Counted from the stretch's first letter, positions 2,347 to 36,486 are shown. The stretch is 64,000 bases of DNA from Ranitomeya imitator (GCF_032444005.1 NC_091284.1:14942001-15006000); one strand, 5' to 3'. Translations and numbers: made by a program. Notes: generated from the letters alone by a model not told the origin.

Positions 2347-2364
2347 TCAGACCAAAAGAAAATC

Positions 2365-3589: not shown

Positions 3590-3644
3590 CTCCTCCTTCT
3601 CATTATTATCTGTGCTTGTTTGGTGAATCTGAGAGGGAATCGTC
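3590..3644 (-). CDS. Cytoplasmic exon of a CD200R-like receptor ([K]TIPSQIHQTSTDNNEKEE)
   Basis: Acceptor ctctctttttacAG, donor GTgagtc; 55 bp; phase-2 start matches the phase-2 end of the TM exon; phase-0 end. Confidence 0.7.
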
Positions 3645-3711
3645 CTGTAAAAAGAGAGTGAAAAAAACATAAAGAAACAGGACAGAGAAACATTGCATCA
3701 TGTCCCATAAT

Positions 3712-4975
3712 CAGCACTCGGACCAGCAGAATAGTGAGTGCAGCTCTGGAGTATAATACATGATGTAAATCAGGATCAGTAATGTAATGTAATGTATGTA
3801 CACAGTGACTGCACCAGCAGAATAGTGAGTGCAGCTCTGGGGTATAATACAGGATGTAACTCAGGATCAGTAATGTAATGTATGTACACAGTGACTGCAC
3901 CAGCAGAATAGTGAGTGCAGCTCTGGGGTATAATACAGGATTTAACTCAGGATCAGTAATGTAATGTATGTACACAGTGACTGCACCAGCAGAATAGTGA
4001 GTGCAGCTCTGGGGTATAATACAGGATGTAACTCAGGATCAGTAATGTAATGTAATGTATGTACACAGTGACTGCACCAGCAGAATAGTGAGTGCAGCTC
4101 TGGGGTATAATACAGGATGTAACTCAGGATCAGTAATGTAATGTATGTACACAGTGACTGCACCAGCAGAATAGTGAGTGCAGCTCTGGGGTATAATACA
4201 GGATTTAACTCAGGATCAGTAATGTAATGTATGTACACAGTGACTGCACCAGCAGAATAGTGAGTGCAGCTCTGGGGTATAATACAGGATGTAACTCAGG
4301 ATCAGTAATGTAATGTATGTACACAGTGACTGCACCAGCAGAATAGTGAGTGCAGCTCTGGGGTATAATACAGGAGGTAACTCAGGATCAGTAATGTAAT
4401 GTATGTACACAGTGACTGCACCAGCAGAATAGTGAGTGCAGCTCTGGGGTATAATACAGGAGGTAACTCAGGATCAGTAATGTATGTACACAGTGACTGC
4501 ACCAGCAGAATAGTGAGTGCAGCTCTGGAGTATAATACAGGATGTAACTCAGGATCAGTAATGTAATGTATGTACACAGTGACTGCACCAGCAGAATAGT
4601 GAGTGCAGCTCTGGGGTATAATACAGGATGTAACTCAGGATCAGTAATGTAATGTATGTACACAGTGACTGCACCAGCAGAATAGTGAGTGCAGCTCTGG
4701 GGTATAATACAGGATTTAACTCAGGATCAGTAATGTAATGTATGTACACAGTGACTGCACCAGCAGAATAGTGAGTGCAGCTCTGGGGTATAATACAGGA
4801 TGTAACTCAGGATCAGTAATGTAATGTATGTACACAGTGACTGCACCAGCAGAATAGTGAGTGCAGCTCTGGGGTATAATACAGGATGTAACTCAGGATC
4901 AGTAATGTAATGTATGTACACAGTGACTGCACCAGCAGAATAGTGAGTGCAGCTCTGGAGTATAATGCAAGATGT
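3712..4975. repeat. Tandem array, ~86-bp unit, ~14 copies
   Basis: Unit TCAGGATCAGTAATGTAATGTATGTACACAGTGACTGCACCAGCAGAATAGTGAGTGCAGCTCTGGGGTATAATACAGGATGTAAC, with TGTAA copy-number variants. Confidence 0.95.
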
Positions 4976-6760
4976 GACTTAATCAGTTAGTGCACCATTA
5001 ACAATATAACTCAGGTTGTTCCTGTGCTGTTGGAGCTGCTGTTCCCAATTTTGTGTCCACTGTAGCCAATCAACAGTCCCTGATCTCCTGCAGCTTTAGA
5101 ATATTTCACCAGACCGTTCATTTCTTCTGATAAAATAGTAAAGAGTGCAGTCAGTAAGCAGTCACAGATTGGCTGCAGCAGTCACTTGACACAAAAATGG
5201 GAACAGTGTCGCCCATTTCACTGTATTTGCGGCTCTGCAGGAGGTGAGTGATTGATGAATGATGAAGCTGGTGTTGTCCAGGAATAGACAATTATATGAA
5301 TGGGATTCTGTCGCCCCCAAAACGGAAACTGAACCACTTATACATTCATCTAGAGGCCTCCAGATGAATGTATAAGAATCACACATGTGATAAAGATTTT
5401 TCTTATTTTGTTTTCTGGCTATCCATCTTATTATATACATAAATGAGGGGGCTTCAGGCACCAGGGGGGCACCGCTCCATCACCTCAATTATAATCGTCT
5501 GCCCCTCCGCTGATGACGATTGACAGTGCTCCAAGGTGCACTGCCTATAGTGAACCCTTAGCCCTCCATGTAGGCTCGCACAGCACCGTGGAGAGGTGAC
5601 CACACGTTCTGCAGAAACCGAGTGCACAGGGTGAGGAGCAAGAGCCACGATACTGAGTAGTGGCTAATACATGAGGAGTGCAGACATCTTGAACTGTGTT
5701 CTGCACCAGATTACAGAGGGAGGATTACCGTAACTGTCCTTGGTATAGGAGATGGACCGCTGATATAGAAGATGAGAAGGAGACCACCCTGACAGAAAGT
5801 GTCCCCCTGAAAGTAGGTAGGAGCTGCCTGACATCCAGGTGAGCGGACCTGAGAGAATGTGATATGTCCATAGTTAGGAGACAGGAATCCAGGAGAGTGT
5901 TGCCCTAAGGCAGAGTGCCGGTTGGTGAGGGCTCAAAGGGACTTTCAGGAGCTGCCAGTGGACTAAGTATATCTGAGGGGTGTGAGACCCCCGGGGAGTA
6001 ATGGACCTCACTGTGACCTGTATGGAGAGCTTCAACAGTGTGTGATGGAGGATAGATGGTGGCACGAGCCCAGGCACACCACAGACCATGGAAAAGTGGG
6101 GAATGGCTGCAGAAATGCTTCATGGGTATTGACGTCTGAATTAGTATAAGTACAAGTGGTTACATAGTGGATGCAAATGAAGCCATTTGGAACTGGTCCT
6201 ATCGACCAGCTTCTTAATGGGGATCCAATGCGTGCTCGGTGTACACCGCAGGGACGGACATCCAGTCTGCGTCCTCCTTACTGGTATTTATAAATACATC
6301 TATCACTCCTCTGTGGGTCATTTGCATTTAAGCTGTTCCATCCAGCATGTCCACATGGATATTCTGTCTCTGAACCCTGCTTATGCAGGTACTATACAGA
6401 TGATCAGGTTTTAAATACATCAGATAGGGATTATATACATTAGGTAGGACTGCTCTATATGGGTATACCTTGACAATTGGTGGAGCAAAAAAAACGTATT
6501 AACTAAATACCCTGTTTTTTTCCATCTTTTGACAAGCAGCACTTGCTTATTACTGTGATTTTTTTTTACAACAGAGTATTTTTGACCTCACTGTGCTTTT
6601 TTGTGTCTTCAAGTGTTTTGGTGGTGTGAACAGGTTCCTACAGACTTGTTCAATGTGCAAGTAGCCCATGTGTTTTTGGTATTCATAAATGCTGGAGGCC
6701 GCCGGTTATTTTCCCCTTTTGGCCCATCACATGTATAATGATGATTAGGGGTTCACTTAC

Positions 6761-6866
6761 TTGTGGTTTGTACAGAACTTCCAATAAATAATGCCAGCTA
6801 TAATAACCAATATAATTGCTCCCGTTACTGAACACAATATAGAAATGATTTTGTTGCTGGACGGCT
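6761..6866 (-). CDS. Transmembrane exon of a CD200R-like receptor ([E]PSSNKIISILCSVTGAIILVIIAGIIYWKFCTNH[K])
   Basis: Acceptor ctctcttttttttttcAG, donor GTaagt; 106 bp; phase 1 start, phase 2 end; ~22-aa hydrophobic helix followed by WK. Confidence 0.85.
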
Positions 6867-7801
6867 CTGAAAAAAAAAAGAGAGAACAATAAGACACTTG
6901 TTCTGCAGATTGGAAACTAGAAGGAGTCGGGCGATGTCTCCCGGAATGACCTGATACCAGACCGGTTCCCTCCGCTATGTGGTCGGTACGTGCAGCAGAG
7001 TACATGGAAGGGACAAACATCACAACATCCCTGAGAAACCATAGAAACCGCTCATACACGCTCTGACCATGATGTCAGCCATCCGTGACTCCGTCCACTG
7101 CAGGTTTCTACAAACCAGTCGCATTTGTATGCCACATACACACAATGGATTGGTGCGTGCCCGTCAGATGTAAACCGGTCAGAGGCCTGTAATCTGCGGC
7201 TCTTCACCAGTAATTATGAATCTAGAGATAAGCAAATCTGTGGAAATTCATATTCAGATGATTCACCCAAATGTAGCTGGAAAATGTAGATAGTATTAAA
7301 TAAATTCAGTGCAAATTGACCAGGAAGGTAAAAACAGAACCTCTTGCTCCTCAGCCCGCGTCTCACATGTCCTACCACTGTCGATCCTCCGATCAGCTCA
7401 TCAGTCTTCTATCTTCTCTTTTTCTCCAGGTGTTGTTCACCAGGTCCCTCTCTGACACTGGCTATAACGTACTGACCTCGTTGCCTCACCCCAGAGGAGC
7501 AATATCCATCATGAACGAGCAGTGAAGGGCCTAGTGAAGAACAACCGTGCAAGACGCCAGGAAAGGGAAAAACATAAAAGAGAGAAGGCAGAGGAGCCAA
7601 TCGGAGGATGAAGACAGAGGAGTATAAGATTTTATAAAACTGGCATTTATGCATCAAATTTGTGCTGGAAATTGTATGGATCAAGTTCTGGAGAACCTGA
7701 ATTTTTTGGAAATTACAATCTACAGTCCCCTGGAGTCTGCTGATTTCCTAACCTGCAGAGAGTTGTAGTCAATGGTACAAATGTTGAGGGCATGGATGGA
7801 T

Positions 7802-8864
7802 TGTAATGAAGACAATCTAGGTTATCGCCCAGGGCCCAAGGCTAGATTACCATCATAATGTTTGACACACCACCATCAGTGGCGCACATCTCTGGGCAGG
7901 GAGCTTTCCTGCCAACAATACAGAATGGCAGCACAGCTCCAAGGGTGCTCCCTTCACCTTTTCGGTCATGTGCTGGTGATGACCTTATCAGCCGGCACCG
8001 GGCAATGAGGTCTGGAACGCACATGGTTGTGCCACGGTCCAGGGATAGCCTGAGCGGCGTAACTAACTGAGCACCTGACTCTTTGCTTGAGACCCCGATG
8101 GTGGGGTCAGACTTGGCTCCAGGTGCTACTCCAGGACGGACCCATGGAGCCATGACAGCTGACCACCACGGGGGACAGGGAAGCAAGGCCGGTCAATGAC
8201 TGGTTAGCAGGCATGATCCAAGCAGGGCTGGAACAGGGACATGAGACCACCACAAGACGGGATCTCATATGCAGGTTCTCAGGTGCCGGTTCAGACAGGG
8301 TAGATAAGCGCAACAGGTACAGATCAGAAAGATCAGGATTGGGACAAAGCACATGTGGGACGGATTCGGGTATAGATAAAGCAGGAAAGACTGGGACAAA
8401 TACAGACAGGGCGGATTGGATCAAGAGCACTAACTAACTAAGTTGCTAAGACACCTCCCAACAGAGGATGATATCTTCAAGAGGTCTCCCAGTTATTGGC
8501 TGGGGACGTCTTTAGCAGTGTGTGCGCTGGCCCTTTAAAAGTCAGAGAGTGTGCGCGCCCTAAGCACACTCCCAGGAGATCTGCGCGCCATGCGCAAGCA
8601 TTTGGAATAGACAGACACAGAGAGAGCGTGGATGGGTGATCAGACACACCAGCGTCCCTGCAGGGAGAGGACACGTGCAGGGATGCCGACGGTGTCCTAA
8701 CCCTGTCATTGTGCCGACATGTACATGATGGCCACAAGGAGAAGTGGAGCTGCAGGTGATCGTCTGGAGAGGTAAATATTATAAACATTTTTAATAAAAT
8801 AATTGAAGTGACCGCAGTCTCCGCCTCCTGGTGATTTGAGATTCTCAAACGAAGCGTCATCACA
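7802..8864. mobile_element. Old LTR-like segment (probable degenerate solo LTR)
   Basis: TGTAATGA...TCATCACA imperfect terminal inverted repeat; no clean TSD; non-coding. Confidence 0.35.
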
Positions 8865-10134
8865 CGGAAAGTAGTAGAAAAAATATCAGTTGGATAATGT
8901 AGTGGGGGAAGGATAGGGAATTTTTAATTTTAAGTATATTACAAAAAGATTAGATTATAGCATTAAATAGATAGAATTTAGGATGAAAACAAAGCTTAGG
9001 TTTGGAGCACCTCTTTAACTAATGCGCACTGAGTGATCTGCCCCATATCATCCAATTTTGTTATACAGTGGGGAGAATACGAATCTGATCCACTGCTAAT
9101 TTTCCCACCTACAGAGAATGGAGAGGTCTATTATTTTTATTGTAGGTACACTTCACCTGTGAGAGACAGAATCTAAAAATAAAATCCAGAATATCACATT
9201 GTAGGATCGTTACATAATTAATTTGCATTTTATTACATGAAATAAGTATTTGATCACCAACCAGTGTGTATTCTGCTCTCACAGACCTGTTAGTTTTTCT
9301 GTAAGAAGCCTCCATTTCTGCACTTGTATTATTTGCACCTTGTGACGGGGTGTACGGCAGAGCAAGTAGGGACAACAGGCCGAGGGATGATTCAACAGAT
9401 TTATTATCAAGAACGCTGGAACAACACATGCAGGTAGATCTACAGAGTCCACAATTAGTCCAATGGAACAGGTTCGGGGGCACCTCCCGATAATCCTTGT
9501 GCCAGGTAACAAAGCAATAGTCCAAGGGATCCCAAATCTCACAAACGACAAGATATGTCCTCAGCTCAAGTCTCGCCCCGTTCGCTTCCACAGTCCTAGA
9601 TGGGCGTGGGGTCTTGCCTCAGCTAAGAATCCTCACTCCTTCTCCTTCAAGGATCAACTCACATCTGATCTCAAAATAAGAATGGATTGTCTGAGCTCCT
9701 GGGATCCGCCCATGAAGGGGAGTAGGGGTCACACCTTCTATTCAATGGTTGGGTCCACCAGAAGATTCTAGACTGGTGGGCTCCACATAGTCTATGTAGT
9801 ATGTACATTTGACTAGCCACCTGCTGTGAGGAAGAATGGCTATTCCTCCACTAGTGATGTTGACAAAGCTTAATTACATTAGAGCTTAGGGCTGCAAGTA
9901 TTGGTGGAAGGAGACATTGTTACAGGTGAACTCCCAGCCAAGAAAATACATAAATTACAGCTAATAGAAACCAGAGAACAGTTACATACATCAAATGGCA
10001 TATTATTTAAATACAGGACAGGGCAAAAGTACATATCACGACAATCCCTTCCCCTCCCAATTTGTGTACGTACCAGGGACCTCTACAGGTCGCTGGTTAA
10101 GTACACACAGGAGGAGCGTAACTTACATGTGGCT

Positions 10135-10605
10135 TCATGCAGCCACAAATTGACATCTTAGCTCTCCCACATCATTGCCCAGGAGAACATCTGCAGGCAG
10201 ACCACCCATCACCCCAACCACACATTGCCTGACCCCAAAACCAAAGTTCAGATCCACAGTGGCTGTGGGAATAGTCCTCCATTGTCCACCAGCCAGTTCA
10301 ATGACAATCCCAGGTCCTCGATGGATTGCCTCAGGCCGAACCACTCGGGGATCAGCCAGTGTGAGGAAAGCCCCTGAGTCACAAAATCCAATAAGTCTCT
10401 GTCCATCCAGCACGACCTCCTGCAAGTGCTTACCTCGATGAGCAGAAGTCGTCATAGCTGCGGGTCGCACACCATAAACTCCTAGTGGTGCAACATGGGT
10501 GGGTGAGGCACTAGGCCAGTCCTCACGTAGTGGTGACACGTCGTCCTCCATGGCACTTGGGTGTACATAATTAATAATATGACTGGGTACAGGATTAATC
10601 CTCAT
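10135..10605 (-). pseudogene. Retropepsin-type aspartic protease, separated from gag by stops/frameshifts
   Basis: LIGFCDSGAFLTL (D-S-G active site) and DVLLGND (ILG.D motif). Confidence 0.8.
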
Positions 10606-10851
10606 TTGAACAGCTGGGCAGGAGGCTTGCAGATGCCCCGGCTGTCCACATCGATAGCATCTCTGCTGGGTCTCACTCCATCCAAGGCGTCCTCTTGGGC
10701 GAGGGGTAAGGGAACCTGGAGGCCGGCTTCCACCTGAAGGTGCTGTAGGGGTTTGAGGACGACTTCTCCATGAGCTGGCTGGGCATGAGGCCTGCAGATG
10801 CCCCAGATGCCCACAACCATAACACTTGCGCTCTGCTACTTCCTCTCCTCG

Positions 10852-12009
10852 TCATATTCCAGAAAACGCAGTAGAAGCAACTGGAGGCACATTTACATGG
10901 GTATCAGCATGAGGTGGTGGCTTAGAGGAACGGGGAACAATGGGGACAGAAGAACAGGGGGCCACCGGTGTTGTGGAGCTGGTAGGCCTCTCTCCATCCT
11001 CCAACAGAACCCTCCACTGAGGCTTGATGATGAGAGCCTCATCAGCTAGAGCTGCAGCTTCCTCCACAGTGGCTGGTCTCCTCTCACGCACCCATTCCCG
11101 GATCTCAGCAGGGCACTTGAAGTAAAACTGCTCTTTTAGGATAACCTGGAGGAAGGTCTCCCAGGTTAAGGCCTCCTCTGCCTCCAGCCAGCGATTACAT
11201 ATTTGTTTGAGTCTGTGGGCATACATCTTGAAAGACACTTCCTCATCACAGGCTAAAGTACGGAACTGAGTCCTGTAAGTGTCTGGGGTAACAGCATAAT
11301 GTTCTAGAATAGTCCGTTTAATCTCCGCATACTCACAGTTCCCCTGAGGGTCCATAGCTCTATAGGCTGTGGCAGCTCCACCCTCTAAGAGCCCCACCAG
11401 ATGTCGGACTCGGTCCCTTTCCGGGACTTCCATTAATCGACACTGATGCTCAAAGTCCTGGAAGAAGCCCTCAATATCGCCTGCAGCCTCATTAAAGGGC
11501 TTGAAGTCTTTGCGGGACACTCTGGGGAGTTCCCTCATGGTGGGTGCTGGGGTTAGAGTCTGTCTGGAGCTTCTAGCTGCTTCCAAAGCGATCTGCCTCT
11601 CCAGCAATGCCATCTCCTGAGCTCTGTCCTCGGCTCTGTGAATGGCCTCCCTCTCCTCGGCTCTGTGAATGGCCTCCCTCTCCCTCTCCTGAGCTCGGTG
11701 AATGGCCTCTTTCTTATAGTCTATGGTGGCCTCTTCTCCCAGCAATGCCAACTCCTCCTCGTACCACACAACCCACTGACTTTTTAGGGTATTTACCTCT
11801 GGCTGCAGTCTTTCCTCCATTTGCTGTGAGGATCCTTCCTCAGCGTCATCTTGCAGGCGAACTCCTTCCAAAGCCTCAATAAGCTGCTCCTTGGAGAGTC
11901 CCTTAAAACGGACTCCTACTTCACGGGCCTTTGATTGTAGGCTCCCCAAAGTCCAGATCTTGTACTCTGCGGTGCTGGTTCCCGATGTTGATGGGCCTTT
12001 GTCCTCCAT
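10852..12009 (-). CDS. Gag with a SCAN-like capsid C-terminal domain
   Basis: Starts MEDKGPSTSG; contains LKEQFYFKCPAEIREWVRERRPATVEEAAALADE, which fits the SCAN consensus LEQF..LP.E...WV....P....A..LA. Confidence 0.8.
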   Translation of the reverse strand: MEDKGPSTSGTSTAEYKIWTLGSLQSKAREVGVRFKGLSKEQLIEALEGVRLQDDAEEGSSQQMEERLQPEVNTLKSQWVVWYEEELALLGEEATIDYKKEAIHRAQEREREAIHRAEEREAIHRAEDRAQEMALLERQIALEAARSSRQTLTPAPTMRELPRVSRKDFKPFNEAAGDIEGFFQDFEHQCRLMEVPERDRVRHLVGLLEGGAATAYRAMDPQGNCEYAEIKRTILEHYAVTPDTYRTQFRTLACDEEVSFKMYAHRLKQICNRWLEAEEALTWETFLQVILKEQFYFKCPAEIREWVRERRPATVEEAAALADEALIIKPQWRVLLEDGERPTSSTTPVAPCSSVPIVPRSSKPPPHADTHVNVPPVASTAFSGI

Positions 12010-14134
12010 TCCTTCTGCTCTGGTCCCACTGCTTGCCACCAGTTTGTGACGGGGTGTACGGCAGAGCAAGTAGGGACAACAGGCCGAGGGATGATTCAAC
12101 AGATTTATTATCAAGAACGCTGGAACAACACATGCAGGTAGATCTACAGAGTCCACAATTAGTCCAATGGAACAGGTTCGGGGGCACCTCCCGATAATCC
12201 TTGTGCCAGGTAACAAAGCAATAGTCCAAGGGATCCCAAATCTCACAAACGACAAGATATGTCCTCAGCTCAAGTCTCGCCCCGTTCGCTTCCACAGTCC
12301 TAGATGGGCGTGGGGTCTTGCCTCAGCTAAGAATCCCCACTCCTTCTCCTTCAAGGATCAACTCACATCTGATCTCAAAATAAGAATGGATTGTCTGAGC
12401 TCCTGGGATCCGCCCATGAAGGGGTAGGGGTTACGCCTTCTATTCAATGGTTGGGTCCACCAGAAGATTCTAGACTGGTGGGCTCCACATAGTCTATGTA
12501 ATATGTACATTTGACTAGCCCCCCTGCTGTGAGGAATAATGGCTATTCCTCCACTAGTGATGTTGACAAAGCTTAATTACATAAGAGCTTAGGGCTGCAA
12601 GTATTGGGGGAAGGAGACATTGTTACAGGTGAACTCCCAGCCAAGAAAATACATAAATTACAGCTAATAGAAACCAGAGAACAGTTACATATATCAAATG
12701 GCATATTATTCAAATACAGGACAGGGCAAAAGTACATATCATGACACACCTGTTTGAACTTGATACCTGTATAAAAGACACCTGTCCATGAGTCGCCCCC
12801 CAGGACAGTGGGGTACTCTGTACAGGGTCCGGTCGCATTTAAAGGGGATGTCACGGTGGCTGCAACCTGGTCCGTGGCCCTGGGCACTCAAATAAAAGGG
12901 AAAAGTCTTTTAAGGGTTTGGTGAATAAAGTTTGTGTTCGTAACGCCACCTGTGGTATTCGGTCAGTGGGGACCAACACTGCTTAGAAGGGTCCTCTGGG
13001 GTGATGTTATGGCAGCTAGATGGTATAACTTCCCACAGGTGAAGTTGGATCCCCAGGGCTCCCAGTGTAGTGAGCAAGGATGGTGGGTTGCCGCTAAATA
13101 AATGGAGGACACAGGGTTGCAGTCTTTACCTGGTTTACTGAAGTTGTAGTCAACCTCAGTCCAGGGTACTGGCAACAGGTGTTGATGGAGTCCATGCAGC
13201 CCGGAAATATGTGGGAATCCCTTTGACAGGCCAGTTTGGGAGGCTTCCACTATGCGCTGGTTTCTGGTCTCTTGCTACCTGTGGTTGTGTGACAAGGTAC
13301 ACTTCTCGCCTGTCCTGGGACAGTACCTGTATGGTAGGCAGCTTGAGCCGTTTAGCTGGGGTCTCTTTATACGGTGACTCCAGGCTCTGGAATGCTGCTG
13401 TACTCCAGGTTTAATGTGGGCAAGTTGCTTTAAACTTTCTGCCCTCCGGTTCTGCTGTGGGACTTGCAGTTGGCCACAACCTCGAGCTCCCGATGCCCGG
13501 TTCTTGCGCTCTAGCTATAAGGAGGCCCTGTCGCAGCCCTCCTTTAGCTCTTAGGTTCCTACATCCTCCCTCACTCTCTGCTTGTCTGCACTAGACTGCC
13601 TGACTCCTCCTCCAGACCAAGATGTAAATTGAGGGAAGTGTAGCACCCCAGGTAGCCGGTTGCTGCAGTGATGTTGCCTTCCCTTCAGGGAGAGTGATGT
13701 CATGCTTGGAGGCAAGGGGGATTCTTTCTATCAGGTAAGGCACTTACATTCAACACATCTGAATCTAGGACAAGAGGGGGAGCTCAGGACCCGGATTCAG
13801 GGGAACTTCCTTAGACTTCATGTGTCCTGGTCTGGAGGAGGAGCCAGTCAGTTAGTAGCGAGTTGTAGAGGAGTGAGAAGAGGAGAACGATGTCTGGAGC
13901 AGACGTAGGGGCCGAGCAGCCACGAGGGGGCTGCTGCCCCTGGAAAGAGTGAGAAGCAGAAGGAGAGTTGAATTGTGAAGGAGCTTAGAGGGAAGAAGCA
14001 CAGTGGAGGAAAGGGCTCAGGAGGGGAACAGCAGAAGGACTCCCTCAGAGCCAGAGCACAGAAGCTGGGTACCGGGAGCCCGAGGTCTTGTTGTTCTCCA
14101 GGACGAGCGACAGAACCAGAGGGCATAGTACTAT

Positions 14135-14503: not shown

Positions 14504-14588
14504 CTGCTACTTTTTCCCTGACTTTTAATTCCATGAATCATGCTTCTAATTTATTGCATGCTGATATATCCATGCTTTTCACACCTAA

Positions 14589-27124: not shown

Positions 27125-27480
27125 ACCGCCTCACCAACCACCCGAGCTGCCGCCTCACCAACCACCCGAGCTGCCGCCTCACCAACCACCCGAGCTGCAG
27201 CCTCACCAACCGCCCGAGCTGCTGCCTCACCTTCCACCTGTGCTGCTGCCTCACCAACCACCCGAGCTGCCACCTCACCAACCACCAGAGCTGCAGCCTC
27301 ACCAACCACCCGAGCTGCCGCCCCACCAACCACCTGAGCTGCCGCCTCACCAATCACCCGAGCTGCTGCCACATCACCAACCACCTGAGCTGCTGCGTCA
27401 CTACCACCAGAGCTGCCACCTCACCAACCACCCAAGCTGCCGCGTCACCACTGCCAGAGCTGCCGCCTCACCACCACCAG
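27125..27480. repeat. 24-bp minisatellite in the L2 3' UTR
   Basis: Unit GCCTCACCAACCACCCGAGCTGCC. Confidence 0.9.
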
Positions 27481-27510
27481 TGCTGCAGAACACCGACCTC
27501 CTGTTTCTTC

Positions 27511-28309
27511 TGTTATGAACTGGTGTTTTAGGAGCAACATGGGCCGAGCTCTGAAGGAGTTGGTACCTGTACTGACCGCAGTCCCTAAGCTCAACACAAC
27601 ACTAGAAGTAGCTGTGGGATGTTCCTGTCACTCCCTAGACACCTCGTCACAGCCTGAGAGCTAACTACCCCTAAAGATAGAAACAGGAAAGCTATCTTGC
27701 CTCAGAGAAAATCCCCAAAGGATAGATAGCCCCCCACAAGTAATGACTGTGAGTGGAGAGAGAAAAGACATACATAGAATGAAACCAGGATGTAGCAAAG
27801 GAGGCCAGTCTAGCTAGATAGATAGGACAGGACAGAATACTGTGCGGTCAGTATTAAAAACTACAAAAATCCACACAGAGTTTACAAAAATCTCCACACC
27901 TGACTAAAGGTGTGGAGGGTAAATCTGCTTCCCAGAGCTTCCAGCTTAACTGAATTAATCCATACTGACAAGCTGGACAAAACATAGAATGCACAGAACG
28001 AATAAGTCCACAACATGTGGACAGAAAAGAGCAAAGCAAGGACTTATCTTTGCTGAACTGGTCAGGAAATCAGGGAAATCCAAGCAGAGATGTGAATCCA
28101 ACCAGGAACCATAGACAAGTGGCACTGGCTGAAGGGAAGAGCCAGGCATAAATAGCCGAGCAGAAAGACAATCAGTGGAAGCAACTGCAGACTGCTAAAT
28201 CCAAGGAGCAGCCATTCCACTTAAAACCACCGGAGGGAGCCCAAGAGCAGAACTCACAAAAGTGCCACTTACAACCACCAGAGGGAGCCCAAGAGCGGAA
28301 TTCACAACA
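27511..28309 (-). mobile_element. Chromovirus solo LTR in reverse orientation
   Basis: Reverse complement begins TGTTGTGAATTC and ends CATAACA; flanking direct repeat TTCTTC (27505-27510, 28310-28315). Confidence 0.88.
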
Positions 28310-28457
28310 TTCTTCCCCATTATCCCAAAGAATGTAAGTCCGCAATGACAGGGTCCTCTCCCCTTTGTACCAGTCTGTCATTGTAAATTTGTTTACAGTT
28401 AATGATATCTATAACCCTGTATGTAACCCCTTCTCATGTACAGCACCATGGAATTAA

Positions 28458-29646
28458 CCCCTTCACGACCTTGCCCTTTTCCGTTTTTGCGTTCTCGTTT
28501 TTTGCTCCCCTCCTTCCCAGAGCCATAACTTTTTTATTTTTCCATCAATATGGCCATGTGAGGGCTTGTTTTTTGTGGGACAAATTGCACTTTTCAACAA
28601 CATCATTGGTTTTAGCATGTCGTGTACTAGAAAATGGGAAAAAATTCCAAGTGCGGTGAAATTGCAAAAAAAGTGCAATCCCACACTTGTTTTTTTGTTT
28701 GGCTTTTTTGCTAGCTTCACTAAATGCTAAAACTGACCAGCCATTTTGATTCTCCAGGTCATTACGAGTTCATAGACACCAAACATGTCTAGGTTACGTT
28801 TTATCTAAGTGGTAAAAAAAATTTCAAACTTTGATAAAAAAAATAATTGCGCAATTTTTGCGTGCTGAGCTGGCGTTTTTAATGATACCATTTTAGTGCA
28901 GATACATTCTTTTGATCGCCCGTTATTACATTTTAATGTCGCGGTGACCAAAAAACCATAATTCTGGCGTTTCGATTTTTTTTTTCGTTTAGTGATCAGG
29001 TTAATCCTTTTTTAATTGATAGATCAGGCGATTCTGAACGCGGCGATACCAAATATGTGTAGGTTTCAATTTTTTTTATTGTTTTATTTTGAATGGGGCG
29101 AAAGGGGGGATGATTTAAACTTTTATATTTTTTTAATTTTTTTCATATTTTTTAAAACATTTTTTTTTTACTTTTGCCATGCTTTAATAGCCTCCATGGG
29201 AGGCTAGATGCAGGCGCCTCTCGATCGGCTCAGCTACATAGCAGCGATCATCAGATCGCTCCTATGTAGCTGAAATGCAGGTGTGCTGTGAGCGCCGACC
29301 ACAGGGTGGCGCTCACAGCAGGCCGGCATCAGTAACCATAGAGGTCTCAAGGACCTCTATGGTTACCATCCTGACGCATCGCCGACCCCCGATCATGTGA
29401 CGGGGTTGGTGATGCGACCATTTCCGGCCGCGCGGCCGGAAGCGCCGGTTAAATGCCTCTGTCAGAGTTTGACAGCGGCATTTAACTGGCTAAAAGCTGC
29501 AGTTTAATCGCGATTTCACCCACCACTATTGCAGGCACATGTCAGCTGTTCATGTCCCGGCTTTGAGGTGGGTTCAGTGCCGGAGCCCGCATCAAAGCAG
29601 GGGATCCAACCTCCGCCGTAATAGTACGACGGAGGTCGGGAAGCGG
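28458..29646. mobile_element. Non-autonomous piggyBac-type element
   Basis: TTAA|CCCCTTCACGACC ... GGTCGGGAAGCGG|TTAA, inserted in the L2 tail. Confidence 0.82.
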
Positions 29647-30501
29647 TTAATGGTGCTATATAAATAAATAATAATAAATAATATGTCAATTGCCTGTAAC
29701 AAGTCTGAGGTGAAGCAGTAACCCTAAGAGCCGGGTCATCTAAGAGATCCTATAAACAGGCTCAAACTGCCTATCGAACATACATCTGTCTTAGGACAGG
29801 AGAGAGGGGACTCTGTCAGCAAGCTTTAAGCCGCAGGGACCTCACCATCTGGCGCAAGTAGGATAGTCTTACGGACCTCACCTGAAGTGGGATCCCTTAT
29901 TGCCTCCAAGCCGGCCGGACTACAGCAACCCTACACCTGGTACCCTGGACTGAGGACTGCTACCATCAGTAAACCAGGTAAAAGACTGCAAACTCTGTCT
30001 CCTCCACTTACTCGTCGGCTTACACCATCTTGCCATACACTTGGGAAGCCCTGGGGACCCCGCATCACCTGTGGGAAGCGTTACCATCTTGTTGCAACAA
30101 CATCAGCCCTTTAAGCAGCGTCAGTCCCTACTGACCACAGGTGGCGTCACGAACAATAGACATTTCAAATCCCTTTAAAGACCTTTCCCTTTAATTGGGC
30201 ACCCAGGGCCACGGACGGGTCGCAGCCACCGTGACATCCCCTTTAAGACCGGACCCGGTACCGACTACCCCGCTGCCCTGGCGGGGCGTTCCAGAAGCTC
30301 CCCTAAAACCGGGTTTTGAGCTCCCCCTTCTGGCCTGGATTCAGAATGTGTTGTGTGTTACAGCTTACCTGCCAAACGGATCCTTCCTGTGTCCAGGCAT
30401 GGCATAACCCTCCCCGAGAGGAAGGCAGCACCACTGTGGTGCCCGAACTCCTGGGGTGCCACATCCACACACTCAATCAATCACACTCCAACCTCTCCAT
30501 C

Positions 30502-31509
30502 ATGGCTAAGACCAAAGAGCTTTATAAGAACACCAGGGACAAAATTGTAGACCTGCACAACAGACCTTGGATGGGATACAGGACAATAGGCAAACAGCTT
30601 GGGGAGAAGGCAACAACTGTTTCACAATTATTAGAAAATGGAAGAAACATAAGATGCCTGTCAATCTTCCGCTGTCTTGGGCTCCATGCAAGGTCTCACC
30701 TCATGGGGTAACGAAGATTCTGAGAAAGGTCAGGAATCAGCCCAGAACTATACAGGACAGCCTGGTCAATGGCCTGAAGAGAGCTGGGACCTCAGTCTCA
30801 AATATTACCATTAGTAACACTACACTGTCATGGAGCAAAATCCTGCAGGACACAAGGTCCCCATGCTCACACCAGCACATGTCCAGGCCCGTTTGAATTT
30901 CACCAATGACCATCTCAATTATCCAGAGGAGGCATGGGAGAAGGTCATCATGTGGTCAGATGAGAACAAAATAGAACTAGTATCAACTCCACTCGCTGTG
31001 TTTGGAGGAATAAGGATGAGTATAACCCGACAAACACCATCCCACCCGTGAAGCATGGTGGGGGAAACCTTTTCAGGGTGCTTTTCTGCAAAGGGGACAG
31101 AACAATTGCATCATAGTTAAGGGATGGATGGATGGGGTCATGTATCATGAGGTTTTGGCCAACAACCTCCTTACCTCAGTAAGACCATTGAAGATGGGTC
31201 ATGATTGGGTCTTCCAACATGACAATGACTCAAAACACACAGCCAGGGCAATAGAGGAGTGGCTCCGTAAGAAGCATTTCAAGAATGTGGAGTGGCCTAG
31301 TATCCAGACCTGAACCCAATAGAAAATATTTGGAGGAGCTGAAACTCAATGTTGCTTAACGACAGCCCCAAAACCTGAATGATCTGGAGAAGATCTGTAT
31401 GGAGGAGGGGGCCAAAATCCCTGCTGCAGTGTGTGCAAACCTGGTCAAAAACCACAGGAAACGTCCAACCTCTGTAACTGCAAACAAAGGTTTCTGGACC
31501 AAATATTAA
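30502..31509 (+). pseudogene. Tc1 transposase relic of the 9066-31811 element
   Basis: [29 protein letters not shown] and [22 protein letters not shown] motifs across several frameshifts. Confidence 0.85.
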
Positions 31510-31548
31510 GCTCTGTTTTTCTATTGTATCAAATACTTATTTAATGCT

Positions 31549-31640
31549 GTTACTGTATGTGATATCTGTAATTTGTATGTAACCCCTTCTCATGTACAGC
31601 ACCATGGAAGTAATGGTGCTATATAAATAAATAATAATAA
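31549..31640 (+). mobile_element. Short 5'-truncated L2 tail inserted in the right TIR region of Tc1
   Basis: Matches the L2 3' end at 28415-28457 plus 29650-29680, ending in (AAT)n. Confidence 0.7.
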
Positions 31641-32061
31641 TGCAAATTAACTATGTAAGAATCATACAATGTGATTTTCTGGATTTTATTTTTAGATTCT
31701 GGCTCTCGCAGGTGAAGTGTACCTCTGATAATAATTACAGACCGCTCCATTCTTTGTGGATTGGAAAACTTCTAAAATCATCAGTGGATCAAATACTTAT
31801 TTTCCTCACTGTATAATAGTGCCGTCCCGTATTTTACAGCGTCCTCTTGTTATATATAGCGACTTTTCTTATTACATAGTATCCTCTATTAGTTATAGCG
31901 CTATGTTATATTTAGTGCTGCACATAAAGGAAAAAATTTGCACTCTGCTGTCATTTTTCCCTCTGCAGATGTACAGCAGAGCACCTGTGTGTTAATCACG
32001 TGACCTAAAAGACGATCTATCAAAGTGGTTCATCTGACATGTCACGTGATACATTGGGGGC

Positions 32062-34255
32062 TATCTGTTATGGGGGATTGCGGATGACGCTCTGTTATGG
32101 GGGATCTGTGGATGATGCACTGTTATGGGGGATCTGTGGATGATGCACTGTTATGGGGGATCTGTGGATGACGCACTGTTATGGGGGATCTGTGGATGAT
32201 TATTATTATTATTATACATTTTTATAGCGCGCACTGTTATGGGGGATCTGTGGATGATGCGCTGTTATGGGGATCTGTGAATGATGCTCTGTTATGGGGA
32301 TCTGTGGATGAGGCACTGTTATGGGGGATCTGTGGAGGATGCACTGTTATGGGGATCTGTGAATGATGCTCTGTTATGGGGATCTGTGGATGAGGCACTG
32401 TTATGGGGATCTGGGGATGAAGCACTGTTATGGGGGATCTGTGGATGAGGCACTGTTATGGGAGATCTGTGGATGATGCACTGTTATGGGGGATCTGTGG
32501 ATGACGCACTGTTATGGGAGATCTGTGGATGACGCACTGTTATGGGGGATCTGTGGATGACGCACTGTTATGGGGATCTGTGGATGATGCTCTGTTATGG
32601 GGATCTGTGGATGAGGCACTGTTATGGGGGATCTGTGGATGAGGCACTGTTATGGGGATCTGGGGATGATGCACTGTTATGGGGGATCTGTGGATGATGC
32701 ACTGTTATGGGGGATCTGTAGATGATGCCCTGTTATGGGGATCTGTGGATGATGCACTGTTATGTGGGATCTGTGGATGATGCACTGTTATGGGGATCTG
32801 TAGATGATGCACTGTTATGGGGATCTGGGGATGAGGCACTGTTATGGGGATCTGTGAATGATGCTTTGTTATGGGGATCTGTGGATGAGGCACTGTTATG
32901 GGGATCTGGGGATGATGCACTGTTATGGGGGATCTGTGGATGATGCACTGTTATGGGGGATCTGTAGATGATGCCCTGTTATGGGGATCTGTGGATGATG
33001 CCCTGTTATGTGGGATCTGTGGATGATGCACTGTTATGAGGGATCTGTGGATGATGCACTGTTATGTGGGATCTGTGGATGACGCACTGTTATGGGGGTC
33101 TGTGGATGAGGCACTGTTATGGGGATCTGTGGATGAGGCCCTGTTATGGGGATCTGTGGATAAGGCACTGTTATGGGGGATCTGTGGCTGATGCACTGTT
33201 ATGGGGATCTGTGGATAACGCACTGTTATGGGGGATCTGTGGATGACGCACTGTTATGGAGATCTGTGGATGATACTCTGTTATGGGGGATCTGTGGATG
33301 ATGCCCTGTTATGGGGGATCTGTGGATGACACACTGTTATGGAGATCTGTGGATGATACTCTGTTATGTGGGATCTGTGGATGATGCACTGTTATGGGGA
33401 TCTGTAGATGATGCACTGTTATGGGGGTCTGTGGATGAGGCACTGTTATGGGGATCTGTAGATGATGCACTGTTATGGGGGATCTGTGGATGAGGCCCTG
33501 TTATGGGGATCTGTGGATAAGGCACTGTCATGGGGATCTGTGGCTGATGCACTGTTATGGGGATCTGTGGATAACGCACTGTTATGGGGGATCTGCGGAT
33601 GACGCACTGTTATGGAGATCTGTGGATGACGCACTGTTAAGGGGGATCTGTGGGTAATGCACTGCTATAGGGATCTGTGGATGATGCTCTGTTATGGGGG
33701 ATCTGTGGATGATGCCCTGTTATGGGGGATCTGTGGATGACACACTGTTATGGGGATCTGTGGATGATGCACTGTTATGTGGGATCTGTGGATGATGCAC
33801 TGTTATGGGGATCTGTAGATGATGCACTGTTATGGGGGTCTGTGGATGAGGCACTGTTATGGGGATCTGTAGATGATGCACTGTTATGGGGGATCTGTGG
33901 ATGATGCACTGTTATGGGGATCTGTGGATGAGGCCCTGTTATGGGGATCTGTGGATAAGGCACTGTCATGGGGATCTGTGGCTGATGCACTGTTATGGGG
34001 ATCTGTGGATAACACCCTGTTATGGGGGATCTGCGGATGACGCACTGTTATGGAGATCTGTGGATGACGCACTGTTAAGGGGGATCTCTGGGTAATGCAC
34101 TGCTATAGGGATCTGTGGATGATGCTCTGTTATGGGGGATCTGTGGATGATGCCCTGTTATGGGGGATCTGTGGATGATGCACTGTTATGGGGATCTGTG
34201 GATGACGGACTTTTAAGGGGGTTCTGCATATGACGCATTGTTATGGGGGCTCAAC
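32062..34255. repeat. 27-28-bp minisatellite, ~80 copies
   Basis: Unit GCACTGTTATGGGG(G)ATCTGTGGATGAT. Confidence 0.95.
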
Positions 34256-35164
34256 GGATGATAATACAGCATTTTATCTTAATTAACCAGACATGTATTT
34301 TCAATAAGCCAGGAGGAATAGACTGTTATCTATATGCTGACTTTTGAATTTATGTGTTTGTTCTTTGTTTGGTTAAGAAAACACAGACTTTTGTTTGTAT
34401 AAGCCAGTAATATTGACTTTAAGTTGACGTTTGTTGTAACATATTGTGCTGTTATCCTTGATGACTAGAGACACAGGGTAATTGAACAATGATGTTTGCT
34501 GATATGTTGATTACACATTGTACAGGCCAGCTAGTTTGTTGACCTACAAACATTGAAGGATAAACTATAAATGCTCAAACAAGGAGTTAATCTTGTCATA
34601 CCTTCCTCTTGACCCCTGGATAATGACTTGAAGGACAACAGTTGTGAACTATATAAGGGAACTATTTCTCCATACAAACAGATTCAGACATCCAAGAGAT
34701 CAAGATAACCAGAGATTCTGTACAAAATCAAAGCCAGAAACACTCCACAAGACAGCAATCAATACATCATGGCTCCATCAAGAGGGACACAGATTTGACA
34801 TTCTGCAGGATGTCAGCTTAGGGGACCATGATCCCGGCTATAAGAATACAGATCTGCTCCATTGATTATCACTGAACCCAAGGATATATTTGGGGTAGTC
34901 ATGATTGGGACCCACTGGTCACCTGAGCCCATGGATACACTTGGTAAAGCCAGCATTGGGACCCCCCTGGAAGGGCCGGCTCCAGGTTTTCGTTGGCCAC
35001 GAGCAAAACAGTTTCTCTGGGCCCCTTTAACACATACCATGATTCATGATGCACAGATATGGCAGAGAAATATAGATATAGTACTATGCCAAAGATTTCA
35101 CTCACTTCTTACATTACATGAGTGATCTATATTGTAAATTCTACAAAAGCTCAGACAGTGGACA

Positions 35165-35610
35165 GTATAGTCCTACATACAGTATTCTGGGCACCACATA
35201 GTGCTCCATACAGAATAATGAGCCCCATATAATGCTCCATACAGTATAATGAGCCCCACATAGTGCTCCATACAGTATAATGAGCCCCATATAATGCTCC
35301 ATACAGTATAATGAGCCCCATATAATGCTCCATACAGTATAATGAGCCCCACATAGTGCTCCATACAGTATAATGAGCCCCATATAATGCTCCATACAGT
35401 ATAATGAGCCCCATATAATGCTCCATACAGTATAATGAGCCCCACATAGTGCTCCATACAGTATAATGAGCCCCATATAATGCTCCATACAGTATAATGA
35501 GCCCCATATAATGCTCCATACAGTATAATGAGCCCCATATAATGCTCCATACAGTATAATGAGCCACGTATATTTTCTCCATGCGGAATAATGAGCCCCA
35601 TATATTGCTC
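35165..35610. repeat. 31-bp minisatellite, ~13 copies
   Basis: Unit GAGCCCCATATAATGCTCCATACAGTATAAT. Confidence 0.93.
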
Positions 35611-36012
35611 CATTCAGTAACTGGTGGAGGGTAGTTGGCCTTGGACGCTCTGAAGTCACAGCTGGTGAGTCAGCGGAAGGGTTACACACTGTAATTTGCA
35701 CCATCTCGGGTATTTGCTGGGACTGTTCTATGTGTTATCAGCCTGTTTTGCTGTTCAGTAAAGTATGGCCACACTGTCTTACCCTCACTCTGTGCTGTCT
35801 GAGTAGTATTATGCCCACAGTAAAAGTGGGTATTCGGTGGGTTTAGCCTTGGTCCATGTGGTTTCGGCTAGTGCACTAGGGCACCCGCTGACTTTCCGTG
35901 TCACCACAGCACTGTTACGGGGCAGTTGAGGTTTTGTGATTGACATACTCCAATGGACGATCTGATGTTACACAGTTGTGGATGAAGCAACATTAAAATA
36001 GTTATAAGATAC

Positions 36013-36357
36013 CTGTGACGTGAATTGTCCAGGATTTGTGAATTCTTCCTAATGAGGGCTCTACTGTAGTAATCTCACAGGAATAATTCCCGGCGTCCTC
36101 GGGTCGGGCGTCTCTTATTTGGAGCTTCGGGGGGATTTCTGCGCTCGTGAAGGAGATTCTGGGGTCTGTGAAGTTTGATACATTTTTTACTCCTTCTGAT
36201 GTAAAACGTAGAACGTGAGATCCGTTTTCTTTCCTCCAGACGATCACTGTAATCAGTGACACATTTCTGATTTTGTTGGTTTCTTCTGAGCAGCTGAAAG
36301 TCACCGAGTCCCCAGCGGAAAATGACAGAACCGGAACCGAGGAGGCGGGAGCCGAGT
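36013..36357 (-). CDS. Ig V-set domain exon of a CD200-receptor-like protein
   Basis: Acceptor ctcctcttctcttccAG, donor GTatct; 345 bp, phase 1-1. GDSVTFSC (B strand), VIVW (C strand), LQIRDARPEDAGNYSC (D.G.Y.C), several N-x-S/T sequons. SNFTDPRI and GRIHKSWTIHV resemble, from memory, CD200R NCTDERI and GNFHRGYHLQV. Confidence 0.88.
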
Positions 36358-36486
36358 CTGGAAGAGAAGAGGAGATCGGAATCACTGTCACACCTTATAG
36401 ATAGTGGGGTCATGAAATGTGACGTTACTACTGAGCACCAATACAGTCCTGTACAGTGACAGCCACACGGCCCGTTATATAAGAAC

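What the first reader, a model, noticed from the sequence alone, without database searches (positions are those of the whole stretch)
3590..36357. Hidden immune receptor gene: CD200R-like protein apparently with a single Ig domain
Seen: three exons with canonical splice sites and matching phases (1-1; 1-2; 2-0) encoding V domain - short stalk - TM - cytoplasmic ...TDNNEKEE. Established: mammalian CD200R has V plus C2 domains, and its tail continues ..EE-DEMQPYASY..NPLY. I found no C2 exon in the non-repetitive parts of the 29-kb intron. The TM has no charged residue, suggesting it is not an adaptor-coupled activating form. Inference: a V-only paralogue, or a CD200R/TIGIT/CD96-cluster relative. 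The signal exon and the terminal, possibly NPxY-bearing, exon were not located and may lie outside the window.
Basis: partly seen in the sequence, partly recalled or inferred. Interest (0 to 1): 0.7.

Follow-up and report, generated by a model that had tools for sequence, protein, structure and literature searches.

The report
Frog V-only CD200R-like receptor gene
The three exons are real: they form the middle of a poison-frog gene that RefSeq already predicts but has not named, encoding a small surface receptor with one antibody-like domain and a tail partly resembling that of the inhibitory immune receptor CD200R. The family is unnamed and mildly interesting; the gene is not hidden.

Summary
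Three minus-strand exons (36357-36013, 6866-6761, 3644-3590) have canonical AG/GT sites and the stated phases. Their translations match residues 11-179 of RefSeq models XP_069616626.1 and XP_069616625.1 ("uncharacterized protein", Ranitomeya imitator) at 100%. The annotated gene spans about 100 kb, so the signal exon and last exon lie outside the window.

The single-V architecture is real. Orthologues in more than 12 anuran species and relatives in catfish and characins all join V directly to TM. A 1.2-kb contig from a related frog carries the uninterrupted coding sequence. The Xenopus laevis V-to-TM intron is 536 bp with no Ig reading frame. The 29-kb intron here holds only transposons and satellites.

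The CD200R affinity is partly supported:
- **For:** a confident V-domain model matches CD200RLa and CD200R best, narrowly ahead of nectins.
- **For:** the unseen last exon carries Y-x-x-R-x-N-T-L-Y, the distal half of the published CD200R signalling motif. It is present in 35 family tails and in 0 of 207 control proteins.
- **Against:** there is no C2 domain, the proximal PYx(S/T)Y spacing is not met, and sequence searches do not single out CD200R.

PVR/TIGIT signature motifs are absent. The best reading is an unnamed V-only relative of CD200R, probably inhibitory through a PTB-domain adaptor. That function is inferred.

The parts
36013..36357 (-). V-set Ig exon (phase 1/1). Encodes DSAPASS...SWTIHVT, with the two canonical Cys, the invariant Trp and DAGNYSC, plus four N-x-S/T sites.
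   Evidence: Splice sites read. Pfam ig/V-set. 100% identical to P0007 residues 11-125. AF2 V-domain model has pLDDT 88.9.
6761..6866 (-). Stalk plus transmembrane exon (phase 1 to 2): EPSSNK-IISILCSVTGAIILVIIAGIIYW-KFCTNH(K). No charged residue in the membrane span.
   Evidence: Splice sites read. Identical to P0007 residues 126-161. Predicted helix at residues 139-158.
3590..3644 (-). First cytoplasmic exon (phase 2 to 0): (K)TIPSQIHQTSTDNNEKEE. It ends in the acidic stretch that precedes the tyrosine motifs of the last exon.
   Evidence: Splice sites read. Identical to P0007 residues 161-179. TIPSQIHQTS is conserved across neobatrachian orthologues.
6867..36012 (-). 29.1-kb intron between the V and TM exons. 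It contains no Ig-like reading frame and is filled with Ty3/gypsy pol ORFs, a SCAN/gag-like ORF and several satellite arrays.
   Evidence: Six-frame motif scans. Pfam of the long ORFs. Tandem repeats.
3645..6760 (-). 3.1-kb intron between the TM and cytoplasmic exons, including an 86-bp satellite (3722-4979, 14.6 copies).
36358..64000 (-). Part of the intron upstream of the V exon. The signal-peptide exon is not here. The stretch holds non-LTR RT fragments, 20-bp arrays and a perfect 1-kb palindrome.
   Evidence: Gene range is about 100.7 kb.
1..3589 (-). Part of the intron downstream of the cytoplasmic exon. The last coding exon (PVYDN...FNTLYD...) is not here. The stretch holds a Tc1/mariner transposase remnant at 2704-3330 (+).

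Best explanation
The window holds exons 2-4 of a five-coding-exon, roughly 100-kb gene of the mimic poison frog Ranitomeya imitator. The product is a 226-residue type I membrane protein: signal peptide, one glycosylated V-set domain, a six-residue stalk, an uncharged TM helix and a 56-residue tail. It belongs to an unnamed family of V-only receptors found in anurans and in catfish and characins. The V domain folds most like the ligand-binding V domain of CD200R/CD200RLa. The tail keeps the distal part of the CD200R signalling motif: an acidic run, P-x-Y, then Y-x-x-R-x-N-T-L-Y. Inferred mechanism: after ligand binding through the V domain, the tail tyrosines are phosphorylated. The NxxY tyrosine then docks a PTB-domain adaptor of the Dok type, as in CD200R (Dok2 then RasGAP), giving ITIM-independent inhibition. 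The frog-specific pY-D-N site could additionally bind Grb2. What is shown: the gene model, the architecture, the conservation, the fold ranking and the presence of the motif. What is inferred: homology with CD200R, the ligand, phosphorylation, the adaptor and the inhibitory sign.
For: Gene model: exon-by-exon identity to XP_069616626.1 and XP_069616625.1. V-only architecture: orthologues from Dendrobates, Phyllobates, Anomaloglossus, Eleutherodactylus, Bufo, Dendropsophus, Leptodactylus, Engystomops, Pseudophryne, Hyperolius, Rana, Lithobates, Discoglossus and Xenopus all lack a second Ig domain. A 1209-nt contig carries the uninterrupted 211-codon coding sequence. The same signal/V/TM/cyt1/cyt2 exon plan occurs in X. 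laevis, where the V-to-TM intron is 536 bp with no Ig ORF, and in a catfish. Fold: the V-only AF2 model (pLDDT 88.9, pTM 0.80) gives Foldseek ranks 1, 2, 5, 6 and 10 to the four CD200R/CD200RLa entries, with the best TM-score (0.77) and lowest rmsd (2.5-2.6 A). Tail: the published CD200R motif has E/D278-282, P285, Y286, S/T288, Y289, K/R292, N294, I/L296 and Y297, with P295 replaced by Val, Ser or Thr outside mammals (PMC8007030). The regex Y..[KR].N.[ILVM]Y hits 35 family proteins on file and 0 of 207 other proteins (334,191 residues). Fish CD200R has YVQRVNSIY against YFERFNSVY in the fish members of this family. Y297 is the Dok2 docking site.
Against: Sequence-only searches do not single out CD200R. 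phmmer of the V exon against PDB gives mouse CD200R4 E 0.02, behind Dpr, vaccinia OPG185, nectin-2 and NITR. Family profiles give Robo, contactin, titin, JAML and CD226 first, with no CD200R in the best 60. The Foldseek margin over nectin-1 is small (E 1.7e-7 against 2.0e-7), and the first, lower-confidence model ranked CRIg first. The proximal half of the CD200R motif is not met: Y1-Y2 spacing is 7 instead of 3, and the fish members lack Y1 and the acidic run. A few members replace R by H or S (P0002, P0012, P0037). A short tyrosine motif can arise by convergence. No expression, ligand or signalling data exist.
Confidence: 0.6

Rival explanations
1. It is the frog's true CD200R orthologue that has simply lost its C2 domain.
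For: The best structural matches are CD200R/CD200RLa V domains. The distal tail motif and an acidic run before it are present.
Against: V-only relatives with the same five-exon plan exist in catfish and characins. Canonical fish CD200R tails read PYASYVQRVNSIYN, so the two types differ within fishes. BLAST from human CD200R1 found CD200R homologues in three amphibian species. No source names any of the hits listed CD200R. The PYx(S/T)Y spacing is not met.
Confidence: 0.1
2. It is a member of the PVR/nectin-like group (TIGIT, CD96, CD226, PVRIG): a single-V inhibitory receptor that binds nectin-type ligands and signals through an ITT-like Y-x-N site.
For: It has the single V + TM + tail layout of TIGIT. 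Nectin-1 and nectin-3 D1 rank 3, 4, 7 and 8 in Foldseek. CD226 domain 2 matches the family profile end to end at E 3e-11. The frog tails carry a Y-D-N site, the Grb2-type consensus used by the TIGIT ITT-like motif.
Against: The PVR-family signature is not met in 27 family V domains: (V/I)(S/T)Q in 7, AX6G in 1, T(F/Y)P in 0, and none of the three in the R. imitator protein. TIGIT is absent from the best 50 Foldseek matches and the best 60 sequence matches. The tail has no ITIM: no [SIVL]-x-Y-x-x-[ILV] in ...EEPVYDNIQDDYFFRFNTLYDQT... (read directly). The Y-D-N site is missing in the fish members.
Confidence: 0.12
3. It is an independent V-set receptor family whose tail motif resembles CD200R by convergence. 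The NxxY motif serves endocytosis or sorting, or the Y-x-N site serves Grb2-mediated activation, rather than Dok-mediated inhibition.
For: NPxY/NxxY motifs are common and mostly serve trafficking. V-set folds are hard to tell apart, with Foldseek E-values within a factor of 20 across many families. Sequence profiles give no CD200R preference.
Against: Two independent features point the same way. The V fold ranks all CD200R-family entries in the top 10. The match covers five positions of the motif (Y, K/R, N, I/L/V, Y), with Thr or Ser at the 295 position as in non-mammalian CD200R.
Confidence: 0.16
4. It is a pseudogene or an annotation artefact, with chance open frames among repeats.
For: The exons sit in a sea of transposons and satellites.
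Against: The frames are open and the splice sites canonical. The V core and tail motif are conserved from catfish to frogs. An uninterrupted spliced coding sequence occurs in a 1.2-kb contig of a related frog.
Confidence: 0.02

Closest known systems
CD200R1 (CD200 receptor 1; inhibitory, signals through Dok2 and RasGAP)
   Same: Both are type I membrane receptors with an N-terminal V-set domain, and CD200R is the best structural match (4bfi_A, 9gwt_P, 4bfg). Both have an uncharged TM and a tail without an ITIM. Both have an acidic run followed by tyrosines, ending in Y-x-x-K/R-x-N-x-I/L-Y with Thr or Ser at the 'P295' position, as in non-mammalian CD200R.
   Different: This protein has no membrane-proximal C2 domain. 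Its proximal tyrosines are spaced P-x-Y-(6)-Y instead of P-Y-x-S/T-Y, and the fish members lack the first tyrosine and the acidic run. V-domain sequence identity is only about 18-21%, and no sequence search prefers CD200R. The ligand is unknown.
CD200RLa / CD200R4 (activating CD200R paralogues)
   Same: CD200RLa is the top Foldseek match (4bfe_C: E 1.7e-7, TMq 0.77, rmsd 2.6 A). CD200R4 (4bfe_A) is the only CD200R-family chain listed by phmmer with the V exon (E 0.02). Frogs also have tail-less paralogues of this family, which suggests a comparable inhibitory/activating pairing.
   Different: The gene in this window has a long signalling tail and no charged TM residue, so it is not the adaptor-coupled type. 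It also has no C2 domain.
TIGIT (PVR/nectin-like family)
   Same: Both have a single V domain, a TM and a short tyrosine-bearing tail. The frog tails have a Y-x-N site of the Grb2-binding kind.
   Different: The PVR-family signature motifs are absent. There is no ITIM. TIGIT is not among the best structural or sequence matches.
Nectin-1 and nectin-3, domain 1
   Same: They are the second-best structural matches (TMq 0.67-0.72).
   Different: Nectins have three Ig domains and an afadin-binding tail. Their signature motifs are not present here.

Membership tests
Immunoglobulin superfamily, V-set | Ig V-type domain: Cys...Trp...D-x-G-x-Y-x-Cys core and a nine-strand sandwich | tested here: met
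   Pfam ig E 2.2e-9 and V-set E 1.3e-6, both above the curated cut-offs. The motif scan found it. The AF2 model has pLDDT 88.9 and nine strands.
CD200R family | N-terminal V domain of the CD200R type | tested here: inconclusive
   By fold, the four CD200R/CD200RLa PDB entries take ranks 1, 2, 5, 6 and 10 with the highest TM-scores, but nectin-1 follows at nearly the same E-value. By sequence there is no preference.
CD200R family | Membrane-proximal C2-type Ig domain (V + C2 ectodomain) | tested here: not met
   No Ig-like frame in the 29-kb intron. The RefSeq models, more than 12 anuran orthologues and a spliced contig all join V directly to TM. The X. laevis V-to-TM intron is 536 bp with no Ig ORF.
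CD200R family | Distal tail motif Y289-x-x-K/R292-x-N294-x-I/L296-Y297 (PMC8007030) | tested here: met
   The R. imitator protein has YFFRFNTLY (encoded outside the window). The regex hits 35 family proteins on file and 0 of 207 controls.
CD200R family | Proximal tail motif: E/D278-282, then x-x-P285-Y286-x-S/T288-Y289 | tested here: not met
   Frogs have (E)EKEE-P-V-Y, then six residues before the next Tyr, so there is no S/T288 equivalent. Fish members lack the acidic run and the first Tyr. The resemblance is only partial (acidic run and P-x-Y).
CD200R family | Binds CD200; recruits Dok2 at phospho-Y297 | not testable with these tools
   Needs binding and signalling assays.
CD200R family | Genomic neighbourhood with CD200, BTLA and other CD200R paralogues | not testable with these tools
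   Flanks of at most 10 kb showed no informative neighbour in X. laevis or a catfish. The R. imitator and D. tinctorius genes alone span about 100 kb, and no DNA was returned for them.
PVR/nectin-like family (TIGIT, CD96, CD226, PVRIG) | V-domain submotifs (V/I)(S/T)Q, AX6G and T(F/Y)P (PMC8981293) | tested here: not met
   Found in 7, 1 and 0 of 27 family V domains respectively. None of the three is in the R. imitator protein.
TIGIT | Cytoplasmic ITIM plus ITT-like motif | tested here: not met
   There is no [SIVL]-x-Y-x-x-[ILV] in the tail read. A Y-D-N site exists in frogs but not in the fish members.
Adaptor-coupled activating receptors (DAP12 or FcR-gamma partners) | Charged residue (K or R) in the TM and a short tail | tested here: not met
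   The TM IISILCSVTGAIILVIIAGIIYW has no charge and the tail is 56 residues. Some frog paralogues do have ...RWI... at the start of the TM and a short tail.

The most novel reading that the evidence does not exclude
The gene represents an old sister lineage of CD200R, present in both ray-finned fishes and frogs and so older than their split. This lineage has only the ligand-binding V domain, keeps the Dok-type Y-x-x-K/R-x-N-x-L-Y docking site, and in frogs is paired with tail-less paralogues whose TM starts with an arginine. That would be a second ITIM-independent inhibitory/activating receptor system. No amniote member appeared among the listed hits, and those lists are truncated.
Probability: 0.3. 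Interest if true: 0.55.

Novelty: new variant of a known kind. Interest (0 to 1): 0.35.

Why it matters
CD200R is the textbook inhibitory receptor that works without an ITIM, and it is an open question whether other receptors use its motif (PMC8007030, discussion). This family is V-only, conserved from catfish to frogs, and keeps just the distal half of that motif. It therefore offers a natural test of which residues are needed for Dok-type signalling. It also gives a handle on how the CD200R/nectin-like receptor group diversified. For genome annotation, it gives a rationale for naming a set of 'uncharacterized' or misnamed models ('CEACAM2-like', 'zig-8-like', 'otk-like', 'roundabout 2-like'). 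It does not reveal a new kind of system.

Tried and rejected
- **Joined peptide not built.** Exons were searched one by one by reference. After that, the database proteins P0007 and P0243, identical to the exons, stood in for the spliced product.
- **Single-exon PDB search and family-profile PDB searches** gave only generic Ig hits, so they cannot assign a subfamily.
- **First AF2 model of the whole protein** (pLDDT 62) gave a non-discriminating Foldseek list headed by CRIg. It was replaced by the V-only model.
- **Foldseek against viral structures** returned generic viral Ig membrane proteins and was not informative.
- **Missing exons.** Searches for the signal and terminal exons in the window found nothing. 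A 'DMSLY' word at 57505 (-) is a chance match, and so is a 13-residue V-like match at 557-519 (-), which is flanked by stop codons.
- **C2 exon.** Pattern scans of the intron found only transposon ORFs.
- **Synteny.** Fetching loci gave no informative neighbours within 10 kb in X. laevis or Pangasianodon, and no DNA was returned for the roughly 100-kb dendrobatid genes.
- **dN/dS.** Not computed between close species because no orthologue DNA could be fetched.
- **Literature.** Searches for this family under CD200R, Xenopus or teleost found nothing specific.
- **Operators' conditions.** No contig taken for human was met, and the window has no N.


Full report
**1. What is in the sequence**

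The gene lies on the minus strand. Reading the DNA gives three exons.
- The V exon is 36357..36013, with cag|AC at the acceptor and CAG|gtatct at the donor, phase 1/1.
- The stalk plus TM exon is 6866..6761, with ttttcag|AGCCG and CACAA|gtaagt, phase 1 to 2.
- The cytoplasmic exon is 3644..3590, with ttacag|GACG and GAGGAG|gtgagt, phase 2 to 0.

The V exon scores above Pfam's cut-offs for ig and V-set. The TM stretch is uncharged. The window has no N.

**2. The model is not chance, and the gene is not hidden**

The joined peptide was not assembled.

The V exon alone found frog proteins at 53-59% identity. A second word search, seeded with one of them, returned P0007. P0007 is XP_069616626.1, an 'uncharacterized protein isoform X2' of Ranitomeya imitator. 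tblastn of P0007 against the window is 100% identical across the V exon. It is also identical, within the exon boundaries, across the other two exons, joined exactly as proposed.

Isoform X1 (P0243, XP_069616625.1, 226 aa) begins with the signal peptide MLPAPATALSTLLCVLLLT. Both isoforms end PVYDNIQDDYFFRFNTLYDQTPAVPMAQRPNKPQRKRP. Neither end is encoded in the window. The annotated gene spans about 100.7 kb of an 848-Mb chromosome. The Dendrobates tinctorius orthologue spans about 96 kb.

So the window comes from R. imitator and holds coding exons 2-4 of 5.

**3. Is the single-V architecture real?**

It is, on four lines of evidence.
- Six-frame scans of the 29-kb intron for Ig signatures found nothing. 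This covered both a V-type pattern and a loose C...[YFW]xC pattern.
- The long ORFs in that intron are Ty3/gypsy protease, RT, RNase H, integrase and chromodomain, plus a SCAN/gag-like ORF. The rest is satellite.
- Every orthologue recovered joins V to TM directly. These are Dendrobates, Phyllobates, R. variabilis, Anomaloglossus, Eleutherodactylus, Bufo (two species), Dendropsophus, Leptodactylus, Engystomops, Pseudophryne, Hyperolius, Rana, Lithobates, Discoglossus and Xenopus laevis.
- A 1209-nt contig (L001) carries the whole 211-codon coding sequence without interruption. Where a gene range could be seen, the gene spans 6.8 kb in a catfish, about 18.8 kb in X. laevis and about 100 kb in dendrobatids. 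The contig therefore most likely comes from spliced RNA.

In X. laevis the exon plan is signal / V / TM / cyt1 / cyt2. The V-to-TM intron there is 536 bp with no Ig frame. A catfish relative has the same plan.

**4. Which family?**

Sequence methods do not resolve the V domain.
- phmmer against PDB gives weak, mixed V-set hits: Dpr, vaccinia OPG185, antibody light chains, nectin-2 at 0.007, NITR at 0.01, PVR at 0.015 and CD200R4 at 0.02.
- Family profiles are swamped by multi-Ig proteins, with JAML and CD226 domain 2 the best immune-type hits.
- The exhaustive HMMER search and a profile word search, with names looked up for 20 hits, define the family. It comprises anuran proteins and roughly 200-residue proteins of catfishes and characins.
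- Almost all are 'uncharacterized'. A few carry evidently automatic names (CEACAM2-like, zig-8-like, otk-like, roundabout 2-like). None of the hits listed is called CD200R, TIGIT or BTLA.
- More distant V-domain relatives include two-V proteins of gar, cichlid and grouper.

Two other lines point to CD200R.

*(a) Structure.* A V-only AlphaFold model built on 27 family sequences is confident (pLDDT 88.9, pTM 0.80). Its Foldseek PDB ranking is shown below.

| Rank | Entry | Protein | Score |
|---|---|---|---|
| 1 | 4bfe_C | mouse CD200RLa | E 1.7e-7, TMq 0.77, rmsd 2.6 A |
| 2 | 4bfi_A | mouse CD200R | TMq 0.77, rmsd 2.5 A |
| 3-4 | 5b21_A, 6lsa_A | nectin-1 D1 | TMq 0.72 and 0.70 |
| 5 | 4bfe_A | mouse CD200RLa | TMq 0.75 |
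| 6 | 9gwt_P | human CD200R1 | TMq 0.75 |
| 7-8 | 5b22_A, 5b22_B | nectin-3 | TMq 0.67 and 0.68 |
| 10 | 4bfg | mouse CD200R | TMq 0.72 |

The margin over nectins is small, so this is supportive rather than decisive.

*(b) Tail.* Timmerman et al. 2021 (PMC8007030) define the CD200R signalling motif. In mammals it is EEDExxPYxxYxxKxNxxY. Across vertebrates the conserved positions are E/D278-282, P285, Y286, S/T288, Y289, K/R292, N294, I/L296 and Y297. Position P295 is replaced by Val, Ser or Thr outside mammals. Their table gives these tails:
- fish CD200R: PYASYVQRVNSIYN
- bird CD200R: PYTTYVQKENVIYN
- mammal CD200R: PYASYTEKNNPLYD

The frog proteins read ...EKEEPVYDN(I/A)x(D/E)(D/E)YF(L/F)RFNTLYD. 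The fish relatives read ...QYFERFNS(V/I/L/M)YG. The distal half, Y-x-x-K/R-x-N-x-[ILVM]-Y, occurs in 35 family proteins on file, always near the C-terminus. It occurs in none of 207 other fetched proteins (334,191 residues, mostly Ig-superfamily).

The proximal half is only echoed. Frogs have an acidic run and P-x-Y, but the first and second tyrosines are 7 apart rather than 3. The fish members lack both the acidic run and the first tyrosine.

**5. Alternatives tested**

The PVR/TIGIT signature is (V/I)(S/T)Q, AX6G and T(F/Y)P (PMC8981293). In 27 family V domains these occur in 7, 1 and 0 members, and none occurs in the R. imitator protein. The tail has no ITIM. TIGIT is absent from all best-match lists.

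A true CD200R orthologue that lost its C2 domain is unlikely. V-only relatives with the same exon plan occur in otophysan fishes, while canonical fish CD200R tails are of a different type. CD200R homologues have also been reported from three amphibian species.

Synteny could not be examined.

**6. How it most likely works**

- **Shown:** a type I membrane glycoprotein with one V domain, an uncharged TM and a 56-residue tail. The tail has three conserved tyrosines: Y-D-N, D-Y-F and N-T-L-Y.
- **Established for CD200R:** phospho-Y297 in the NxxY context recruits Dok2, which recruits RasGAP and dampens Erk and Akt signalling without an ITIM.
- **Inferred here:** the matching Y-x-x-R-x-N-T-L-Y site works the same way, which would make this an inhibitory receptor. 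The frog-specific pY-D-N would fit a Grb2 SH2 site (consensus quoted from my own knowledge; Grb2 recruitment by the TIGIT ITT-like motif is).
- **Unknown:** the ligand. CD200 is the obvious candidate to test.

Frogs also have one- or two-V paralogues with a TM beginning ...RWI... and almost no tail (P0003, P0163, P0043, P0087, P0025, P0046). That suggests paired activating partners, as in the CD200R family. This too is inference.

**7. Verdict**

The gene is already predicted in RefSeq but unnamed. It is best described as a V-only variant of the CD200R-like receptor type, belonging to an unnamed family shared by frogs and otophysan fishes. It is of modest interest.

Noticed in passing
window 60895-61901 and 62532-63509: A perfect (100% complementary) inverted repeat of about 1 kb per arm, reported as three contiguous blocks, with 630 nt between the arms. 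It carries a 408-codon ORF (61265-62491, -) with no Pfam match. It could be a very recent palindromic duplication, a foldback element or a long-read assembly artefact.
   Followed up: partly
window 21979-24639 (+), 25338-26723 (+), 17743-18636 (+), 20535-22046 (+): At least two Ty3/gypsy-type retrotransposon copies lie inside the V-to-TM intron. One has an 886-codon open pol (RT, RNase H, integrase, chromodomain), so it is possibly young.
   Followed up: partly
window 10852-12255 (-) and 10138-10851 (-): A 467-codon ORF with a SCAN domain (E 1.4e-15), followed by a frame with CCHC zinc knuckles. This is the gag-like part of a retroelement in the same orientation as the gene.
   Followed up: partly
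window 3722-4979; 32065-34249; 35176-35619; 37116-38970 and 59183-60701: Several satellite arrays are present. An 86-bp unit (14.6 copies) lies directly upstream of the cytoplasmic exon. A 27/55-bp minisatellite has GC skew of about 0.49. A 31-bp array lies about 400 bp downstream, in the direction of transcription, of the V exon's donor site. The same 20-bp unit forms two arrays 20 kb apart.
   Followed up: no
window 2704-3330 (+), with 1998-2468 (+): A Tc1/mariner-type transposase remnant (DDE_3) lies in the intron before the unseen last exon.
   Followed up: partly
window 48689-50194 (+), 53266-54669 (-), 41460-42482 (+), 42890-43543 (+): Non-LTR reverse-transcriptase ORFs. Two of them, about 470-500 codons each, are in opposite orientation and hit the same RVT_1 region with almost equal scores.
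   Followed up: no
related proteins P0003, P0163 (Hyla sarda), P0043 (Pseudophryne), P0087 (Rana), P0025 (Hyperolius), P0046 (Pyxicephalus): Frog paralogues of the family have one or two V domains, a TM that begins with a conserved ...RWI... and a tail of only a few residues. They are possible adaptor-coupled activating counterparts. P0010 (Anomaloglossus) has two tandem V domains and no TM.
   Followed up: no
L003 (X. laevis CM004468.1, 1.89-1.93 Mb) against this window: Intron size differs enormously between orthologues. The V-to-TM intron is 536 bp in X. laevis and 29,146 bp in R. imitator. The whole gene is about 18.8 kb against about 100 kb, entirely through transposon and satellite gain.
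   Followed up: partly
fish relatives P0075 (Astatotilapia), P0114 (Silurus), P0174 (Hemibagrus): Some fish relatives carry two tandem V domains. The cichlid protein has ITIM-like sites (SFVQYHAQL, VTYGVL) instead of the NxxY motif, so tails have been swapped within the wider V-domain group.
   Followed up: no
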